From the NCBI GenBank assembly GCA_047495785.1, contig JBLDXI010000002.1, positions 1,116,001-1,180,000 on the forward strand: DNA of 64,000 bases, written 5' to 3'. Under the pieces are notes generated by a model, which saw nothing but the letters and a program-made list of their open reading frames with translations, ran no database searches and had not been told where the DNA came from. Numbering within the stretch: the first letter of the stretch is position 1; each line of letters starts with the position of its first letter. The DNA comes from Lepidodermella squamata. Lineage: Eukaryota > Animalia > Gastrotricha. The position numbers and the translations under genes were made by a program. This document shows, piece after piece, positions 33,947-42,445 of the stretch.

Positions 33947-36900
33947 ATGGGGCCGAATTACCTTGTTCTCCTGCTGGGTAAATTTTACAAAAAAAATTAA
34001 CATTCACTATAATAAAGCAATTTTTTAGTCATCCTGTCGGCAATCTGCGATGCCAAAATTCGTTTAAAGCGCGAAAATCAGGACGATGTGGAAATTTTAG
34101 AGGAGGAGGAGGAAGACGACGACCAACCTGAACAATCTGCGTCAACCCCATTTAGCACAACCACCGGCGCACCGCCAGTTGTTAGAAAAATCTGGAATAT
34201 CGACATCGAATCGAAATTGGACGGTTTGAGCATCTCCGAGTCGCCATTTCGGCCTTATCACACCAAACCGAAAATTGTGGCTATTGATGGTGCGATTTTT
34301 TCAAGATTTTTTTACTGTGTTCCATAATCGTTGTTTTGTTCAGGACAAATTGTCGCATTTTTCTGCGCGTCAGCTTTTGAAGTCATTGCGATTGACGTCG
34401 AAGCTGGCTCAACTCTATGGCGCCGTTATTTAGAGTCAGGAAATCGCTCTTCATCATTTACAAATAAATGCCGAATCGGGTAAAATTATTATTTTTTTAA
34501 TTAACCTTGATTAACAATTCTTTTTAGATTCTGTGCTGGTGTCGATATTCACATTGACCTATCAAAAGTTAAAGCCGTGCCTAAAATCGGTAGACCAAAG
34601 TGCGACGTTCAGGTGTTCGCGATATCACCTGGTTCAGCTTTGTTCACCCTAGATGGAAGAACAGGACGAGATTGCCAAAATGCAGTGGTTCGCGCGAATA
34701 AATTTCAATTTAATTTTTAGCTAAATTAAAAAATGTCCTTAGAATCTTTTTACCGACACGCCGATTTCCATGTCGGAAGATGCGTCGCCATCAGCTGGTT
34801 ATGGTGTAACAATACCGCCTTTGATTGCCAAAGACTGGGTGGTAACCGCTATGGACACATCTCGAGCATGTAAGGCTTATTAAAGCGGTGATTTGAGTAA
34901 CAAAAATTTCATTTTTTCAGCCAACATTCGAGGTGGTTATATTGAAACCAGACTATTGGTAAGATGAAGTTATCCTTAAAAAATTATTTTATTTGAAAAC
35001 TTTGTGTTATACAGTCTAACACTTCGGTTATTGCACTTCGGAAAAGGTAGAGGAAAAAGCATCGATTTTTCAATTTCTCAATAAAATTGATGACCTAGAT
35101 ACGGAAGTGCGTTTAAAAGTCCTCTCGTTTACTCTGCTGAACTCGGTAGGTTGTTATGAATCAGCGATTATTCATCAATTTTTTACTCACGCGACAACTT
35201 TTCCACGTGCTTTAATTTTGCTTTGTGTAGATTTGATTTTCGCAATTGTCTCCCCGGCTAACTCGCCTTACGCTCCTTCAGCCGAAGACAGGTTTTCCTT
35301 CTGACTCCAACCTGATTTTTTTTAATTCCCACGCACATTTCTGTAGATTTGCAAATTCAGTTCTTGCGCTTCGGTTGCAAGATTTAACCGTTATTTGGAA
35401 TTATCGATTCCTTTACCACGATGATTTCGTCTTCGATTACCGCCATCCTCCAACTCTTGTCGAACTTGCCGACCCGGCTGGCCGGAAAACAACCTCACTT
35501 TTCATTGTAGGTTTTCAGTCCTAATAACTATCGAAACTTTAATTTCAACTTTTCAGTTGACGCCTTTCGGTAACATTTACTGGCTCGACGCAGCGACTGG
35601 GTACGAGCGGCATCAAGCTCATGTCAGGCCGCTGTACTTCGAGAAGGCAAATGAGGTCGACGAGAGGCGCGACAATTGGGTGCGCCTCAGTGGCGGCACT
35701 TTTGGCAACATTTTCAGCGACAACATTCCATCTGAAGAGACCAAATTCAGCGTAAAATTATAACTACGTTTTTAATTAGCCTCCTTAACAATTTTTTAAC
35801 AGAGATTCCCGAACTTGGAAATGCCGGACGAGGGAGTTGTAAGGCTGTCTCCTCCGGGCCTTGTTAACGGCAATTTGGTTATTGACGAAAACAGAAGGGT
35901 GGCCTATGTATCCTTTGTTCAGTCTTTATTTTGTAGGTTTTTACTAAAATTATTGTTTATTCTGATTATTCGATTTTCTATTTTTAGTTCTTGAACCACC
36001 TTCTAACGATGCGAATTCCGCTGGCGAGTGTTCAGCGAGTAGCAGTCACGTGACCGGGTGTCAACTCCCTAAACCGTTAGGCGTTGCACTTTGTCCGTTA
36101 AGCTGCGAGACGGGATTTATCGCGGCTTTAGAGGCCGGCTCGAATATGACCACCCCGGAGCAGATCAGCCTCGGCCATCAGTGGTGCGCTAATGTTTCAG
36201 AAAGCGGCGTCACTGCGATCCACCTTGACAACAGCTCAGTAGCTTGGTCATTTGCTATTACCCCAACACTGCTGCCTGATGGCCTCGTTCAGTAAGTTTA
36301 TTCCAAGTTTTTTAATTAATTAATTTTTTTTATTATTTTAAGGATACCGCAACTCCTCCATATTCGAGCATTTGACGTGCTTTTAGTGCCGCTCCTTTCA
36401 TCGATGCCGCAGCTAGGCGAAACAGTGTGGTTAGTCGATCCGTTCACGAGAGGTGAGTCATTTCTCCACAGATAATGTTCAGCAAAAAAATAACTTTATT
36501 GCGCGCACTGCAAAATTTTAAGGTAGACGTTTTTATATTTCAATAATCGCTAAATTTTATTCATTTATGTTGGCGCTTCAGACCTATTACCTTGGAATAG
36601 CAGGAATTTAAGGAATTGTACTAGTACAGTGTATTGTACTACAAGCCCATTACAGTGCGCGTACTTTGTTGTAATTTGTTATCATTGCGCGTGATTCATT
36701 GCGCTGCGCACGCGCCGTGTAAGGGGCGGAGCTTAGTCACACTATTGTTTGCACTACAACCGGGTCGATAATTACACGTGTGCATATGCAAATTTATAGC
36801 ATGGATGTGTCTTATCTCAGCCGAGAAAGGGGACCCGAAACTGAAGCGGAAAGAGTATCGCTTCTCGGCCTTTTTGGCTATGATCAAAGTGTAGTATCTT

Positions 36901-39699
36901 GTTAGCAAAACAGCTGAAAAAGTACAGGTCGACACCGCAGATGGCTGCGTTGATCGAGCGACGACATAAAGCGTTGCGACAGTACCGTTCTACGGGAAAC
37001 CCTGTGTTTCAGGCCAGGGCGGACGCGTTCTATGCTCGATTCAAAGAGTTAGCAGCCTTAGCTGAAGAGCGCAAGCACACGCGTAACCTTCAGCGGATGG
37101 AAAAGCGTAGAAGGGTAGATTCGGGGGCGTTCTTCCGGGCTTTTCGTGAGATCACAGCTGAGAGTGGGTCGGCACCAGGGCCAGCGATCCGCACCCTGAC
37201 CAACGAGGCAGGTGAGCTGGTTGTCGGTGACGCGGCCAGAGCCGAGTTGTTCCGCGATCATTACAAGTCGCAGTTGAACCCTAAGCCGAAGGTCGAGAAT
37301 GATCCAGAGATCAAGGCACATCATGCCGAGGTCGAAAGGATTGTTCAAGAGGATCGGGAGCTGTTCAACCCGATCGAGACCAAGGAGATTGACGTGAAAG
37401 TCATGATCTCAAGGGCTGAGATGAGAAGCGCGGTTCGACGTTTGAAGCTCAAGGCTCCAGGCCGTGATGAGATTTCGAACGTGCTCATCAAGAAGGGTGG
37501 GCCGGTACTTTGGGCGTATCTGCGCCATTTGTACAATTATAGCCTAGCTTGTGGGTTCGTGCCGGAGAGGTGGAAGTTGGCCGTTATCGTCCCGCTTCCG
37601 AGGTCAGGGAAGGACTTGTCGAAACCGTCAGGTTACCGTCCCGTGTCGCTTCTTCCGACAGTAGCGAAGCTGCTAGAGCTCATTTTGGCTACTAGGCTAG
37701 CTCTTCTTTTCAGGTCAAATAATATAATTCCTGATCATCAGTCTGGTTTTCAGATACGCCGATCGACGAGCGATCAAACTTTCCGATTCTCGCAGGCCAG
37801 AGCGATGGCGCGGCGTCGTCGAACGAAGATGGTGATGATCGCGGCCCTGCTGGATTTCGAAGGCGCCTTCAACGCGGTGTGTCACAACTCGCTGCGCGTG
37901 AAGCTTCGAGACTGCGTCGCTGTTCCAAGATCAATGGTGCGCTGGGTCTCGTCCTTCCTGACCGGCCGGACCTTTACGGTCAAGGTGAGTAGCTCCTTCA
38001 GTGAGACAGCAGATATCGGCTCAGGGGTTCCGCAAGGATCCTCATTGAGCCCTATACTCTTTGCCTTTTTCACAGCGGACTTGATGCCGGACAACAACAG
38101 CGACGAGCGCAAGGCCTTCACCGCTTCGTTCGCTGACGACGTGCTCTTGTTCGCTGTGGCTTGCTACACTGGGATGGCGAAGCAGCGGGTGCAGACGGCG
38201 CTGACGCGGGTCTCTCGATGGAGCAGACTCTGGAAGTTGCCGCTTAGTCCGCCGAAGTGCCAAATGCTGCGGTTTGGCGGACAAGTCAACGACGACGACC
38301 GGCTGTTTGTGGGTGACGAGAAGCTGCCGAAGGTCGCGGCGGCGAAGTACCTTGGTGTCACGTTTGACGCGATCGGGTCGTGGAAGCCGCATTTCGACAA
38401 CATCGAGGCGGATGCGCGATCTCGACTCGGGGCTCTTCGCCGGGTCTGCTTTCCGGGTTCGCCGCTTGGCTTTGCCTCGCGGAAGTTGCTGTATCTGACG
38501 ATCGTGAGACCGGTTCTTGAGTACTCCTGTGTGGCCTGGTTGGATGCGTCGTATGCGCAGAAAAAGCGCTTGATCGTGCTGCAGAACAACTGTTTGCGGG
38601 CGATCATCGGCTCGTCTATTCTGGACAAGCAGGACGAATCTGAGCTCTACCGCCTAACTGGAGTGGAGCCGCTGGAACGCCGCTGGCTGAAACTAGCAGT
38701 CGGCTTTGCTGATCGGGCTTTGCAGTTCGTGCCACCAGTCGCCGCCATGATCGCCGACCATCGTCGAGAGTGGGGCGTGGCTGGTACCCCGCTCGGACAG
38801 TTCATCAATTTTGTGGGCCGTTAGGCCTTGTCTATCTATGTATGTATATGAGCATCAGTCAGTTTAATACAGAAAATAAAACAACAAAAACCCATACACA
38901 ATACACATATATACACAAAATAAAATAAAAACAAAACCACATTAGCCCTGTGCCACGACTGTAAATGAGTGTGTGCGTTGTCATATATATTTCTTGTTTT
39001 TTATAAAAAGATGAAACGCATAACATATGCTGTTACTGTTATTAATTGCTGCTATTTGATATACTTGCTACTATTGTCGGTCAAAAGTTGTTAACAAGAG
39101 ACCGTTTTTCCAATAAAACAAGACCGTTGGAAAAAAAATGTAGTATCTGTTCTTTGTAGTTTAATATCTACAACGGCCTCCATGTGGGGCCTACGATATT
39201 AGCCCTATTTTTGGCTAGCCGGGCGGGAGCAGCCAGCTTGCTGGACCCCGTCCACGAGTCGGCCCGGTATTGCAGTACCTCCGGGATTCGGCTCACCCCC
39301 TGAAAAGGGGGATTGAAACTAAAAACAAATAGCCAGCTTAAAAAGTGTCTTCGCACAGGTATCAACGTGGCGAGGATAGATGACGGAGAGCTGATAATCG
39401 AGTCTGATCAAATCATCAAAGACGACGTTATTCACTTTGCGAAACTGGTCGCGCTCAGCGATTTATCGGCTATCAAAAGCAACACCCCCGATGCGGTCAT
39501 TTCCGACAGATTGGCCTCCTCAATTTTGCTCTATGGTGAGGGACATTCGTTCTCGAAATCTGGAAACGGCAAACAGCCTGCGACAAGGACCAACTTTCAC
39601 ATTTCTCTTCTACGTCTGGCTGATAAATCGTCAGCTGCTCAGCTTATTCCTCATTTGCATGTACTTCCCATCATTTTTTCGGCTCTTGTTTTGAGGTGA
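33947..39699 (+). CDS. Secreted, probably GPI-anchored PQQ beta-propeller protein homologous to bacterial quinoprotein glucose dehydrogenase (Gcd), 15 exons
   Basis: The frame stays open across 14 GT-AG introns. Signal peptide MGPNYLVLLLVILSAICDA. Gcd-like blocks: FCAGV..KCDVQVF...LFTLDGRTGRDC, YGVTIPPLI, and YSAELDLIF...EDRFANSVLALRLQDLTVIWNYRFLYHDDFVFDYRHPPTLVEL...GNIYWLDAATG. Hydrophobic C-terminus SSAAQLIPHLHVLPIIFSALVLR*. Confidence 0.82.
36723..36856 (+). promoter_or_regulatory. Putative U2 snRNA promoter (GC box and octamer)
   Basis: GGGGCGGAGC at 36723-36732 and a perfect octamer ATGCAAAT at 36786-36793, directly upstream of the U2 +1 at 36857. Confidence 0.55.
36857..36899 (+). ncRNA. 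U2: U2 snRNA gene, 5' part (nt 1-43), interrupted by a LINE
   Basis: ATCGCTTCTCGGCCTTTTTGGCTATGATCAAAGTGTAGTATCT is the canonical U2 5' end, with stem I, the U2/U6 helix region and the branch-point-recognition sequence GTAGTA. Confidence 0.97.
36899..38824 (+). CDS. LINE ORF2 C-terminal part (reverse transcriptase), uninterrupted; endonuclease lost by 5' truncation
   Basis: KAPGRDEI, YRPVSLLPTVAKLLE, QSGF, LDFEGAFNAV, GVPQGSSLSP, FADD, KYLGVTFD, then the Jockey-type tail RKLLYLTIVRPVLEYSCVAW...LQNNCLRAI. No C-terminal RLE or RNase H. The start codon in the ORF track is a TTG at the junction. Confidence 0.94.
   Translation: MLAKQLKKYRSTPQMAALIERRHKALRQYRSTGNPVFQARADAFYARFKELAALAEERKHTRNLQRMEKRRRVDSGAFFRAFREITAESGSAPGPAIRTLTNEAGELVVGDAARAELFRDHYKSQLNPKPKVENDPEIKAHHAEVERIVQEDRELFNPIETKEIDVKVMISRAEMRSAVRRLKLKAPGRDEISNVLIKKGGPVLWAYLRHLYNYSLACGFVPERWKLAVIVPLPRSGKDLSKPSGYRPVSLLPTVAKLLELILATRLALLFRSNNIIPDHQSGFQIRRSTSDQTFRFSQARAMARRRRTKMVMIAALLDFEGAFNAVCHNSLRVKLRDCVAVPRSMVRWVSSFLTGRTFTVKVSSSFSETADIGSGVPQGSSLSPILFAFFTADLMPDNNSDERKAFTASFADDVLLFAVACYTGMAKQRVQTALTRVSRWSRLWKLPLSPPKCQMLRFGGQVNDDDRLFVGDEKLPKVAAAKYLGVTFDAIGSWKPHFDNIEADARSRLGALRRVCFPGSPLGFASRKLLYLTIVRPVLEYSCVAWLDASYAQKKRLIVLQNNCLRAIIGSSILDKQDESELYRLTGVEPLERRWLKLAVGFADRALQFVPPVAAMIADHRREWGVAGTPLGQFINFVGR
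36900..39138 (+). mobile_element. 5'-truncated non-LTR retrotransposon (Jockey/I-group-like) inserted in U2 snRNA, with 10-bp TSD and A8 tail
   Basis: RT ORF to 38824, AT-rich 3'UTR, AATAAA at 39112-39117 and A8 at 39131-39138. TSD TGTAGTATCT at 36890-36899 and 39139-39148. Confidence 0.96.
39139..39298 (+). ncRNA. U2: U2 snRNA gene, 3' part (from nt 34 to the end)
   Basis: TGTAGTATCTGTTCTT, stem IIa TTGTAG-TTTAATAT-CTACAA, stem IIb GGCCTC..GGGCC, Sm site ATTTTTG at 39207-39213, stem III, and stem IV with loop ATTGCAGTAC. Confidence 0.97.
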
Positions 39700-41051
39700 A
39701 AATAAAAATTATTTATATTACGCAACAAAACACGTGAGAAAACAAGCTTTTTTATTACCTCTTGCAGCAACAATATTATTATTCTTCCATTTTTTATGAT
39801 AATAAAACGACTTTGTACAGATGGCTGAATCCGCCATTTTTAATACAGTCGATTCAGTTCGCAATATAATAATCGTAACAGTAGTGTTAAAAATAGAAAA
39901 GTATACATTTTTCACGTTTTGTTTTTTCCGAAAAGAGAAGATTGACCATCCGGCGTTATCATGTCATACAAAAACACAGCCATGCGCTTCAAAGGGCGAT
40001 TGAAGACTAGGCGGAATTTCGTCCGAGAGAGAGAAACAACTCGTGATGATATATATTGTACATTACAATAACGGCGGTCATGGCTCAGGAAATTATCAAG
40101 TGTATTAAAGCAAGGCTCGAGCAGTCGCTTCTTTCTTTCACAGCGAGAGAAATGGGACTTTGATTTGCATATCAGGAGCAGGCTACATCTTAATATTGTT
40201 ATAAAAACAGAGGAAGCAAAACAAGCAGCTGGTTTCATGTGACACGGAAACAGCATCGGCAAAAAGCAGCGTCGCGATTGTTCAGCTTATTATAGATGAA
40301 TTTGATTTCACTCGTTTCCAGCAGATCCTAAAAGAAAACAATAAGGAATTGAAAATTTGAACTCCTATTTCTAAAATAATCTAGCTTTAAAAAACTACTG
40401 GTCTCCTTCTGCCGACTTCTGCCTGATTTACCACTGACCCAGTTTAATAATATTCCGAAATTGATGACGACTCTGTTGAAAGAGCTAATTATTTATGTGA
40501 ACATCGCTTTTGCTGGAGATTTCTGTAGCCGCTCCTAGCGGATTTCCGACCGATCGCGCCCGCGTAGCCCGATCCCTTGAGTTTTTGAGCGCATCCGATT
40601 TTGCGATGCCCTTAGACGTCCGCGGCCGCCCCGGCGACTTAGCATTTTCGCGTGAATTTTTCTCAATTTCGAGATGTAGCTTCGACCCATGTTACAGCGC
40701 GGGTATACTTGATAGCTCTGCTAGAGCTATTTTGCTAAAGATGGTATACACAGTCGTTTTCCTCAGTGGTGCGGCGCTTTTCGCGACCGCTGTTGTCAAT
40801 AGTCGCTTTTTGACTAATGCTTGTGATAGTGTTCTGTCTCACGGACATTTTTGTTTCCTGTTTGTTGTTCACCCAGGTGAACGCGAACTTGTAAAAAATC
40901 ACGGAAAAACTGAAAAAAGTGACAGTAAAATTGGTCTAAGGAAAAAAGTCAGGCGTAGCGAGTCCGGCCGCAGGCAAGAAGATTGCGACGAAGAAGCCGG
41001 TGACGAGAGGAAAAGAGCAGGAGGTAGTTATTGAGAGTAGCCTAAGTCGGC

Positions 41052-41082
41052 CTTCTCGGCCTTTTTGGCTATATCAAAGTGT
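41052..41082 (+). pseudogene. U2: Second U2 snRNA 5' fragment (nt 5-36, 1-nt deletion), promoterless
   Basis: CTTCTCGGCCTTTTTGGCTAT-ATCAAAGTGT is identical to 36861-36892 apart from one deleted G. The upstream flank is unrelated to the U2 promoter. Confidence 0.88.
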
Positions 41083-42445
41083 TTTAACGCAAATTCGGAT
41101 TATTCTGATATTGCTTCATTTGATTTGATAAAAGTAGCATTGCTAGCACTCCTCTTACTATTTGCTGCCTTATCAAGCCCTCTCTCCTGAGATCGCGAGA
41201 TAGGCTTCTTATAGTATAGGCGTAAGCTATTAATGTTCTTTCACACCGAGGTCTAGCGTACTTCGCTTCGTCCGAGTAACTCAGGGTTTGGGCATTCCCT
41301 CTCCCTGCATGAAAAGCGAAGCCAGTATGTCTGGACTTCATAGGGGCGTAGTAGTTCGTTCCACCGAGATGAGCTCTGACTCTGATCGGTCGGCCCGTTC
41401 AGCGGGCAAGGTCAAGCCTTGCGATTGCAAGCAAGTCCATCGGACGGCCACTGCTTCGCGAGGAGTCCCCGAAGCCCTTGGTTGGATCCTTGAAGGGCCC
41501 CAAGTTGGCAGAGCGATGCTCCCCTGTCCGGCTCCGGCTGGAGATCCTCGTTGATAATGAGGGACTGTTCACGGTTGTGGCGTCAAAGACTTTGTCGTCT
41601 TTGTCTTTAGGTTCAATCATTTCAGTTACAAACCTTCCGCTTTCTGCGCTGGTTCTTAATATATACCAGTGTTTGCGCCGTAACATCCTCCAACGGAAAA
41701 GCAACAGGCCGTCTTTAAGGTTCTTCCTTAGTTCTTTCTACGATGACCCGACGTGGCCATTCCGATCGGAAAAAGGATTCCGACGTCGAAGAGCGCGTCA
41801 AAAGAGTTGAGGATTCGATGCGAGGGGTTAAAGGCACGATTGATCAAATGCATGAAATGCTCGTCATTCTGACTAACGAAAACTAACGATCAACCCCTAA
41901 CCACACATTGCAGCGCAAGACTGGACAACGCCTACTTAAAACCGAGTTTCCTTCAACTTTTTTTATTAGGGATGGTTGGGGTTTATTTCGGGCTTTGTGG
42001 TTCCGATTTGAATGTTGCTTCTGATTCTGCTTGCTCGCCAATGCCTTCTGCTTGGGTGAGCGACGACGTCTTTGTTTTTTCGGGCCCGCTTTCACTGACG
42101 AAGCCTTCTGCAACGGCAGTAGTAGCCGCTCCAAGCGGAAAGTGGCCTGTTTTTAACTACCTATGCTTTTTTCGCTTTTGCGGGCCCTCTGCTGAAGCAA
42201 AGTTTGCCGGGCTAGACCCGAAACGTCATCGCGAGCTCACTGCGGTCTCACCTGAGGCCAAGATCACGAAGCCGTGGATTTGTCGCTGTGGGGCACTTGG
42301 TTTGATGTGCAAGGACGCCGCGACTGTTAAGATGCTTCTTACGCGCAAAGGCTGGCCTGCGTCTGCGTTCAGCGGCAACGCCCGGCCGCGTCGCCCGACG
42401 TCGTTTGATTACAAGGACTTCGACCCGGAAATAATGAAGGCGGCA
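41083..42445 (+). mobile_element. Decayed retroelement-like segment (possible LINE 5'UTR plus frameshifted ORF1) fused to the U2 fragment
   Basis: GC-richer than its flanks, with no intron signals. Broken coding-like pieces: MSGLHRG.. at 41327, a coiled-coil-like KGTIDQMHEMLVILTNE, and KPWICRCGALGLMCKDAATVKMLLTRKGWPASAFSG. Family assignment is inference. Confidence 0.45.

What the first reader, a model, noticed from the sequence alone, without database searches (positions are those of the whole stretch)
36857..39298. Jockey/I-like LINE inserted precisely into the branch-point-recognition region of a U2 snRNA gene: candidate third lineage of U2-targeting retrotransposons
Seen in sequence: a complete U2 gene is split after nt 43. 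The insert has an uninterrupted 641-codon RT frame, AATAAA, an A8 tail and a perfect 10-bp TSD (TGTAGTATCT) covering the invariant GTAGTA branch-pairing sequence, so it is a young target-primed insertion. Established: the known U2-specific non-LTR elements are Keno (Tx1 clade, APE endonuclease) and Utopia (NeSL-related, C-terminal restriction-like endonuclease). This RT has no C-terminal CCHC/RLE and lacks Tx1-type motifs (NWRPISLLNxDYK). It has Jockey/I-type ones instead (YRPVSLL, KLLYLTIVRPVLEYSCVAW, LQNNCLR). The 3' junction (before U34 here, U32 in human numbering) also appears several nt upstream of the Keno/Utopia site as I recall it (~nt 37-38). Inference: an independent origin of U2 targeting in a clade not known to me for snRNA specificity.
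Basis: partly seen in the sequence, partly recalled or inferred. Interest (0 to 1): 0.92.

Follow-up and report, generated by a model that had tools for sequence, protein, structure and literature searches.

The report
Leader-gene LINE stray copy in U2
A young, truncated jumping gene (LINE) really does split a U2 spliceosomal RNA gene, but 85% of its 86 genomic copies sit at one spot in a small spliced-leader-like RNA gene in the ribosomal DNA spacer, so the U2 copy is a stray landing at a look-alike sequence, not a sign of a U2-specific family.

Summary
A 196-nt U2 gene is split after nt 43 by a 2.24-kb 5'-truncated LINE with an open 641-codon RT frame, AATAAA, A8 and a perfect 10-bp TSD.

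Of 86 genomic 3' ends of this element, 73 lie at one site in the rDNA spacer, 12 are dispersed and 1 is in U2. The rDNA site is GAGG^TTAGTATC, the leader/donor junction of a multicopy spliced-leader-like RNA gene next to 5S. The U2 copy is 100% identical over 2,230 nt to full-length rDNA copies.

The U2 site matches the normal target at 11 of 15 positions (TC..AG..TAGTATC). The copy is therefore best read as a recent look-alike off-target.

Full-length copies encode an ORF1 with three CCHC knuckles and a 928-939-aa APE+RT ORF2. This is a Jockey/I-group-like layout, and the clade is not resolved.

U2 is nevertheless hit repeatedly. Five of 47 U2 genes carry LINE 3' ends at nt 28-34, from four tail types. 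One other family carries a captured U2 head.

The scan has already reported this leader-gene-targeting guild, and a U2-resident LINE, on other DNA of this genome (s1-422642, s1-430868 and others).

The parts
36857..36899 (+). U2 snRNA gene, 5' part (nt 1-43), left attached to its own upstream region
   Evidence: Direct reading. Identical to the heads of 40 intact U2 genes.
36890..36899 (+). Target-site duplication, copy 1 (TGTAGTATCT = U2 nt 34-43)
   Evidence: Its length falls within the 10-15 bp TSD range of this family at its normal site.
36900..39130 (+). 5'-truncated body of the family A LINE. It starts at codon ~288 of ORF2 and lacks ORF1 and the APE domain.
   Evidence: 100% identical over 2,230 nt to full-length rDNA copies L043, L044 and L045. 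tblastn aligns aa 288-928 of the full ORF2.
36899..38824 (+). Open frame of 641 codons (C-terminal two thirds of ORF2). It has no ATG at its start, so it is a dead-on-arrival fragment.
37625..38365 (+). Reverse-transcriptase domain (RVT_1, aa 243-489 of the frame)
   Evidence: Pfam PF00078, E=5e-28.
38825..39130 (+). 3' UTR with AATAAA at 39112-39117, ending ...GACCGTTGG
   Evidence: At least 40 copies at 96-100% identity elsewhere in the genome.
39131..39138 (+). Poly(A) tail, A8
   Evidence: Other copies have tails of A6 to A21.
39139..39148 (+). Target-site duplication, copy 2 (TGTAGTATCT)
39139..39301 (+). U2 snRNA gene, 3' part (nt 34-196)
   Evidence: Rfam RF00004. Identical anchor to 46 other U2 genes.

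Best explanation
The insert is a very recent, 5'-truncated and therefore dead copy of an active non-LTR retrotransposon, here called family A. Family A has an ORF1 with three CCHC knuckles, an ORF2 made of an AP-type endonuclease plus RT, and a poly(A) tail.

Its normal target is one position in a multicopy small RNA gene that lies beside 5S in the rDNA intergenic spacer. That position is the junction between a ~33-nt leader ending ...TTTTCTGAG and the following GTTAGTATC. The gene has the anatomy of a spliced-leader RNA gene.

Inferred mechanism: the endonuclease nicks the bottom strand opposite GAGG^TTAGTATC. The RT then primes on the poly(A) tail (target-primed reverse transcription). A second nick 10-15 bp downstream creates the TSD. 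The element always lands in the sense orientation, so full-length copies can be transcribed from the leader gene's promoter.

The U2 copy arose when the same machinery nicked AAAG^TGTAGTATC in a U2 gene. That site matches the normal target at 11 of 15 positions, including TAGTATC.

Shown here: the copy counts, junctions, TSDs, sequence identity and domain content. Inferred: that the endonuclease reads the TAGTATC-containing motif, and that the target gene is a working spliced-leader gene.
For: Counts: 86 exact 3' ends, of which 73 are at the spacer site, 12 dispersed and 1 in U2.

Location: the spacer site lies between 18S and 5S/28S in rDNA units. 5'-truncated copies there have TSDs of 10-15 bp that begin with TTAGTATCA.

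Age and activity: the U2 copy is 100% identical to L043-L045. At least 40 intact 928-939-aa ORF2s exist.

Domains: APE plus RVT_1 by Pfam. The APE catalytic residues are invariant in the family alignment, and the model has an AP-endonuclease fold.

Look-alike: 11 of 15 positions match. The chance estimate is about 0.0075 after allowing 5 offsets and 13 non-target insertions.

Relatives: metagenome relatives at 55-60% ORF2 identity sit at the homologous ...CAG|GTT.GTATC junction, one of them beside a 5S gene.

The target as a leader gene: the leader occurs 496 times. In dispersed copies it is joined exactly after GAG to many unrelated sequences. The 5' ends of those copies stop at a common AAATATCTGCG.
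Against: None of the 12 other dispersed copies shows TAGTATC in its flank, so look-alike guidance is not general and the match was noticed after the fact. The nick is shifted by 1 nt relative to TAGTATC between the two sites. No RNA data were available to show that the leader is trans-spliced or that the element is co-transcribed. The Sm site of the target gene is unconvincing, and no Rfam SL family matches it. No contig in four other public runs bridges the U2/element junction, so the insertion rests on this assembly alone.
Confidence: 0.8

Rival explanations
1. One reading: this element belongs to a lineage specialised on U2 snRNA genes, a third U2-targeting family beside Keno and Utopia.
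For: The insertion is precise, in the sense orientation and inside the conserved GUAGUA region. Four other U2 genes carry LINE ends at nt 28-31.
Against: Only 1 of 86 copies of this element is in U2, against 73 of 86 in the spacer gene. No other poly(A) junction exists at this U2 position in the genome. Forty-two of 47 U2 genes are intact.
Confidence: 0.03
2. Pure chance off-target: the element occasionally inserts anywhere (12 other dispersed copies), one such event hit a U2 gene, and the TAGTATC match is coincidence.
For: The twelve dispersed copies have unrelated flanks, and L019 has an unrelated 11-bp TSD.
Against: The estimated chance of an 11/15 match at the nick is below 0.01. Four further independent LINE insertions from three other tail types fall within 7 nt of the same U2 position, although U2 genes total about 9 kb of a 121-Mb genome.
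Confidence: 0.13
3. Assembly artefact: a chimeric join of rDNA-derived LINE reads with a U2 locus.
For: The element is a high-copy repeat identical to rDNA copies. No bridging contig was found in other runs.
Against: Both junctions are clean, and there is a perfect 10-bp duplication of U2's own sequence with a poly(A) tail at the 3' junction. A misjoin would not create these. The locus lies inside a multi-megabase contig.
Confidence: 0.02

Closest known systems
R1 / TRAS / SART type site-specific APE LINEs (R1 clade)
   Same: They share an AP-type endonuclease plus RT, an ORF1 with CCHC knuckles, precise insertion into one site of a multicopy sequence, a fixed orientation and frequent 5' truncation. 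The most likely working model here is the same: target choice mainly through sequence-specific nicking by the APE domain.
   Different: The target is a small leader-RNA-like gene in the rDNA spacer, not 28S/18S rRNA or telomeric repeats. ORF2 is shorter (928-939 aa) and has no C-terminal Cys/His motif. The APE profile matches human L1 EN (2.5e-21) better than TRAS1 EN (2.7e-16), and R1Bm EN is not among the 60 matches shown. Clade membership is therefore untested.
Jockey clade (I group) LINEs
   Same: The layout is the same: an ORF1 with three CCHC knuckles overlapping an ORF2 of about 920-940 aa that is APE+RT, with no RNase H, no C-terminal zinc knuckle and a poly(A) tail. This comparison rests on established knowledge of the clade's layout.
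   Different: Classical Jockey-clade elements are not sequence-specific, apart from the Drosophila telomeric elements. No phylogeny with named references could be run here.
NeSL-1 and CRE/SLACS/CZAR (spliced-leader-gene-specific retrotransposons)
   Same: The niche is the same kind: multicopy spliced-leader RNA genes. In the RLE world, SL-specific NeSL is reported to have branched from U2-specific Utopia (PMC4640811). That is the same pair of targets seen together here.
   Different: Those elements use a C-terminal restriction-like endonuclease. This family has an N-terminal AP-type endonuclease and no RLE.
Keno (Tx1 clade) and Utopia, the known U2-specific LINEs
   Same: They insert in the sense orientation into the 5' region of U2.
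   Different: Their 3' flank starts at U2 nt 39 (PMC4640811); here it starts at nt 34. Utopia has an RLE. Most Utopia families are flanked by U2, whereas this family is flanked by U2 in 1 of 86 copies.

Membership tests
Non-LTR retrotransposon inserted by target-primed reverse transcription | RT ORF, 3' poly(A), variable 5' truncation, target-site duplication | tested here: met
U2-specific LINE (functional class: Keno, Utopia) | Most copies of the family are flanked by U2 sequence | tested here: not met
   1 of 86 3' ends is flanked by U2. It is the only poly(A) junction at this U2 site.
Keno / Utopia | 3' flanking U2 sequence starts at nt 39 | tested here: not met
   Here the flank starts at nt 34. 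The value for Keno/Utopia comes from PMC4640811.
Utopia / NeSL / CRE (RLE elements) | C-terminal PD-(D/E)xK restriction-like endonuclease | tested here: not met
   Full-length ORF2 has an N-terminal Exo_endo_phos domain followed by RVT_1 and nothing after the RT. The C-terminus was read directly.
Keno (Tx1 clade) | RT groups with Tx1-clade references in a phylogeny | not testable with these tools
   No named reference LINE proteins could be obtained. The Pfam Exo_endo_phos_2 hit fits the I/Jockey/CR1 side only by general knowledge.
Jockey clade | ORF1 with three CCHC knuckles; ORF2 = APE+RT without RNase H or a C-terminal CCHC | tested here: met
   The ORF1 translation shows three Cys-His knuckles. 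Pfam finds only APE and RT in ORF2.
Jockey clade | RT phylogenetic placement within Jockey (RTclass1 or equivalent) | not testable with these tools
   No named references were available. The Atlas neighbours are APE+RT clusters, commonest in Arthropoda, which is a lead only.
R1 clade | Phylogenetic placement with R1/TRAS/SART | tested here: inconclusive
   The APE profile hits TRAS1 EN at 2.7e-16 but L1 EN at 2.5e-21. Foldseek gives generic APE1/L1 EN matches.
Spliced-leader RNA gene (the family's normal target) | Short 5' exon ending in AG followed by GT; multicopy; often linked to 5S | tested here: met
   The junction reads ...TTTTCTGAG|GTTAGTATC. There are 496 leader copies, mostly in rDNA units that also hold 5S.
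Spliced-leader RNA gene (the family's normal target) | The leader is found at the 5' end of unrelated RNAs, joined exactly at the exon end | tested here: met
   This was tested at the DNA level only. At least 23 dispersed copies join GAG| to different sequences, and their upstream ends stop at a common AAATATCTGCG. RNA was not examined.
Spliced-leader RNA gene (the family's normal target) | Sm-binding site between stem-loops | tested here: inconclusive
   The fold shows a donor stem-loop and a 3' hairpin but no clear Sm site in the target gene. The neighbouring paralogue has AAUUUGA before its hairpin. No Rfam SL family matches.

The most novel reading that the evidence does not exclude
U2 snRNA genes may be a second, productive niche of an AP-endonuclease LINE guild whose home is a spliced-leader gene, so that a target switch from SL to U2 is caught in progress.

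Five of 47 U2 genes carry ends of four tail types at nt 28-34. One family (tail ...CGCGTTGGC) carries U2 nt 3-36 as its own 5' end. It is found full-length both in a U2 gene and in leader genes, which implies that a U2-resident copy transcribed from the U2 promoter was once a master copy. Two low-copy tails occur only in U2 (3 of 3 copies).

This would mirror, in APE elements, the Utopia (U2) to NeSL (SL) switch described for RLE elements.
Probability: 0.45. Interest if true: 0.8.

Novelty: new variant of a known kind. Interest (0 to 1): 0.6.

Why it matters
Site-specific LINEs are the main natural examples of programmable, RNA-templated insertion, and how a new target specificity arises is poorly understood.

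Here the home site and a natural off-target of one active element can be compared directly: GAGG^TTAGTATC against AAAG^TGTAGTATC. Sister families in the same genome have landed a few bases away in U2, and one of them has propagated from there. This gives a concrete, testable case of how look-alike sequences in two small nuclear RNA genes could bridge a change of target.

In the papers I could search, spliced-leader genes are reported as targets only of restriction-like-endonuclease elements. An AP-endonuclease guild in that niche would widen that picture.

For the finding as written, the useful result is negative: this is not a U2-specific lineage.

Tried and rejected
- **Naming the RT clade.** The top 120 sequence homologues are almost all unnamed metagenome proteins. 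Cluster look-up of 10 more distant hits returned no names. PDB sequence search gave only generic R2/L1 RT hits. The Atlas gave generic APE+RT clusters. The clade therefore remains unresolved.
- **APE domain.** I built an alignment, a profile search, an AlphaFold model (pLDDT 88) and a Foldseek search. These confirm an intact AP-endonuclease fold but do not separate R1-like from L1-like.
- **Reads.** Contigs of four public runs did not bridge either U2/element junction. The single "skip" joint comes from intact U2 genes elsewhere. This is uninformative about presence or polymorphism. No run on record as RNA held the stretch.
- **Rfam.** No SL family matches the spacer, even at E up to 10.
- **Literature.** String searches for the leader found nothing relevant. 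I found no paper on gastrotrich spliced leaders or on APE LINEs in SL genes.
- **Shared promoter element.** I considered whether U2 and the leader gene share a promoter element, the 13-mer TGCAAATTTATAG. It lies at -70 to -58 of U2 but about 1 nt upstream of the inferred leader start, so I do not use it.
- **The second U2 head in the window.** I considered whether the head at 41049 is the missing 5' end of this element. It is not.
- The other interrupted U2 loci were therefore read only as short pattern matches, and their coding regions were not examined.

Full report
**1. Observation**

Rfam detects one U2 gene in the window (RF00004, 118.6 bits). Direct reading gives these coordinates:

| Feature | Window coordinates |
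|---|---|
| U2 nt 1-43 | 36857-36899 |
| Foreign segment (element body) | 36900-39130 |
| AATAAA | 39112-39117 |
| Poly(A), A8 | 39131-39138 |
| U2 nt 34-196 | 39139-39301 |
| TSD TGTAGTATCT | 36890-36899 and 39139-39148 |

The two U2 parts minus one TSD copy give the same 196 nt as the intact U2 genes of this genome. The frame 36899-38824 is open for 641 codons and holds only an RVT_1 domain.

**2. Where the other copies are**

The 305-nt 3' UTR has at least 40 copies at 96-100% identity. In the 30 loci fetched, all but four tails are followed by TTAGTATCA(A/T)CACC...; the four are the window's own copy, two unrelated flanks and one shifted junction.

Rfam places this flank in the rDNA intergenic spacer. 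The 28S 3' end and a 5S gene lie on one side and the 18S 5' end on the other. The element is on the 5S strand, antisense to 18S/28S.

A genome-wide census of the exact tail GACCGTTGG+A6 gives 86 ends:

| Location of 3' end | Count |
|---|---|
| Spacer site (64 with the canonical flank; the rest 1-14 nt shifted or in variant units) | 73 |
| Dispersed, with unrelated flanks | 12 |
| U2 (the window copy) | 1 |

No other poly(A)-type junction exists at this U2 position. That condition is met.

**3. The element**

The genome holds at least 40 intact ORF2s of 928-939 aa. ORF2 has an N-terminal AP-type endonuclease (PF03372/PF14529) followed by RVT_1, with no RNase H and no C-terminal domain. The catalytic APE residues are invariant in an alignment with relatives. 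The modelled domain (pLDDT 88) matches APE1 and L1 EN folds.

ORF1 overlaps the ORF2 start. It is at least 500 aa long (it runs off the fetched loci) and has three CCHC knuckles.

The U2 insert equals aa 288-928 of ORF2 plus the 3' UTR. It lacks ORF1 and the endonuclease, so it is dead on arrival. It is 100% identical over 2,230 nt to the full-length rDNA copies L043-L045, so the event is very recent and the family is active.

**4. The normal target**

5'-truncated copies define the empty site as ...AAATTTTCTGAGG^TTAGTATCAACACC..., with TSDs of 10-15 bp. I tested this at the DNA level.

- The 19-mer ending in CTGAG occurs 496 times. Most copies are followed by GTTAGTATC... or by variant "introns" with the same leader.
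- On large contigs the leader is joined exactly after GAG to many different sequences.
- In 23 such copies the upstream similarity ends at a common AAATATCTGCG, or at shorter truncated versions of it.

This is the signature of reverse-transcribed RNAs that begin with a ~33-nt leader ending at GAG.

A paralogous unit with a clearer Sm-like site and a 3' hairpin lies 471 nt downstream.

I conclude that the target is very probably a spliced-leader RNA gene. RNA evidence is lacking, the target gene's Sm site is unconvincing, and Rfam has no match.

Metagenome relatives at 55-60% ORF2 identity sit at the homologous junction ...CAG|GTT.GTATC, and one of them lies next to an antisense 5S gene. The specificity is therefore old. 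A relative at 40% identity shows different flanks.

**5. Why U2**

When aligned on TAGTATC, the U2 site TCAAAGTGTAGTATC and the home site TCTGAGGTTAGTATC agree at 11 of 15 positions. Both nicks are G^T, one base apart. The chance estimate, after allowing 5 offsets and 13 non-home insertions, is about 0.0075. This estimate is post hoc.

Independent support comes from a survey of all 47 U2 genes with an exact anchor. Forty-two are intact and five are interrupted, all in the sense orientation, with LINE 3' ends abutting U2 nt 28-34.

| Tail type | Genomic copies | Where they lie |
|---|---|---|
| A (this element) | 86 | 73 spacer site, 12 dispersed, 1 U2 |
| B (...TTCGGAGCGTG) | 2 | Both in U2; one is a 22-nt stump with a 7-bp TSD |
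| C (...CGCGTTGGC) | 5 | 2 in the leader gene, 2 dispersed, 1 in U2 |
| D (...GCTCGTTCC) | 1 | In U2 |

Family C carries U2 nt 3-36 as its own 5' end. It is present as a ~5.5-kb copy in a U2 gene and in two leader genes.

I infer that the guild's endonucleases recognise a motif shared by the leader/donor junction and the U2 branch-site-recognition region. I also infer that at least one family has propagated from a U2-resident copy. Their relatedness to family A therefore rests only on tail similarity and shared targets.

**6. Comparison with known systems**

PMC4640811 states that target-specific LINEs fall into the early-branching RLE clades, Tx1 and R1. It also states that only Keno and Utopia target U2, both with the 3' flank at nt 39, and that SL-specific NeSL branched from U2-specific Utopia.

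This family is not Utopia or NeSL, because it has no RLE. It does not behave like Keno, because its junction is at nt 34 and 1 of 86 copies is in U2. Its layout is Jockey-type, but no named references could be obtained for a tree.

A review of TEs in rDNA lists no spacer-site-specific LINE (PMC10946416). I found no paper on APE LINEs in SL genes.

**7. Verdict**

The U2-specific reading is wrong for this element. The best reading is a stray, look-alike-guided copy of a leader-gene-specific APE LINE.

The wider pattern of recurrent U2 hits and a captured U2 head is the interesting part. Other agents of this scan have already noted it on other DNA of this genome (s1-430868, s1-421450, s1-422642).

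Noticed in passing
window 41049-41120: U2 nt ~4-36 (31/32 identical, no promoter) is fused to TTTAACGCAAATTCGGATTATTCTG.... This equals the 5' end of another LINE family (tail ...CGCGTTGGC), which carries a captured U2 head in intact copies at C15:3235949, C51:185557 and C116:25460. It is an old, diverged copy of that family and not the missing 5' end of the element in the finding.
   Followed up: partly
G000 C15:3235910-3241438: A ~5.5-kb copy of the captured-head family lies inside a U2 gene. The U2 head runs to nt 41, then the element's own U2 nt 3-36, and the tail is followed by U2 from nt 31 (TSD AAGTGTAGTAT). Read only through pattern matches.
   Followed up: partly
G000 C33:1806536, C42:728439, C19:1882059: Two low-copy LINE tails (...TTCGGAGCGTG, 2 copies; ...GATGCTCGTTCC, 1 copy) occur only in U2 genes at nt 28-29. 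The C42 copy is a 22-nt stump with TSD CAAAGTG.
   Followed up: partly
many large contigs, e.g. C4:456236, C7:4435450, C20:3091415, C81:3437: Dispersed repeats begin with the 33-nt leader joined exactly at GAG to several different sequences. They are probably retroposed leader-carrying RNAs or transposon families that carry the leader at their 5' end.
   Followed up: partly
L005:2270-2380 (rDNA spacer); also L061:5030-5149: A second leader-like unit lies 471 nt downstream of the target gene (...CGATTTTCGAATTCTAAG|GTATGATCG, with AAUUUGA and a GC hairpin). It is conserved in a metagenome relative's flank.
   Followed up: partly
window 36787-36799 and L005 ~1396-1408: The 13-mer TGCAAATTTATAG is shared between the U2 upstream region (-70 to -58) and the sequence just before the leader start. 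The positions differ, so its meaning is unclear.
   Followed up: no
window 37754 (run X1) and window 41918-41947: In another organism's contigs, a sequence nearly identical to window 41918-41947 is joined to this LINE at position 37754 (loose end). This may be a recombinant or non-autonomous relative.
   Followed up: no
G000 C3:1133965-1134166: A U2 match of 118.8 bits and 202 nt, similar in score to the interrupted window copy, does not contain the exact U2 anchors and was not read. It may be a sixth disrupted or divergent U2 gene.
   Followed up: no
The U2 gene and its LINE may therefore lie inside or next to that gene.
   Followed up: no
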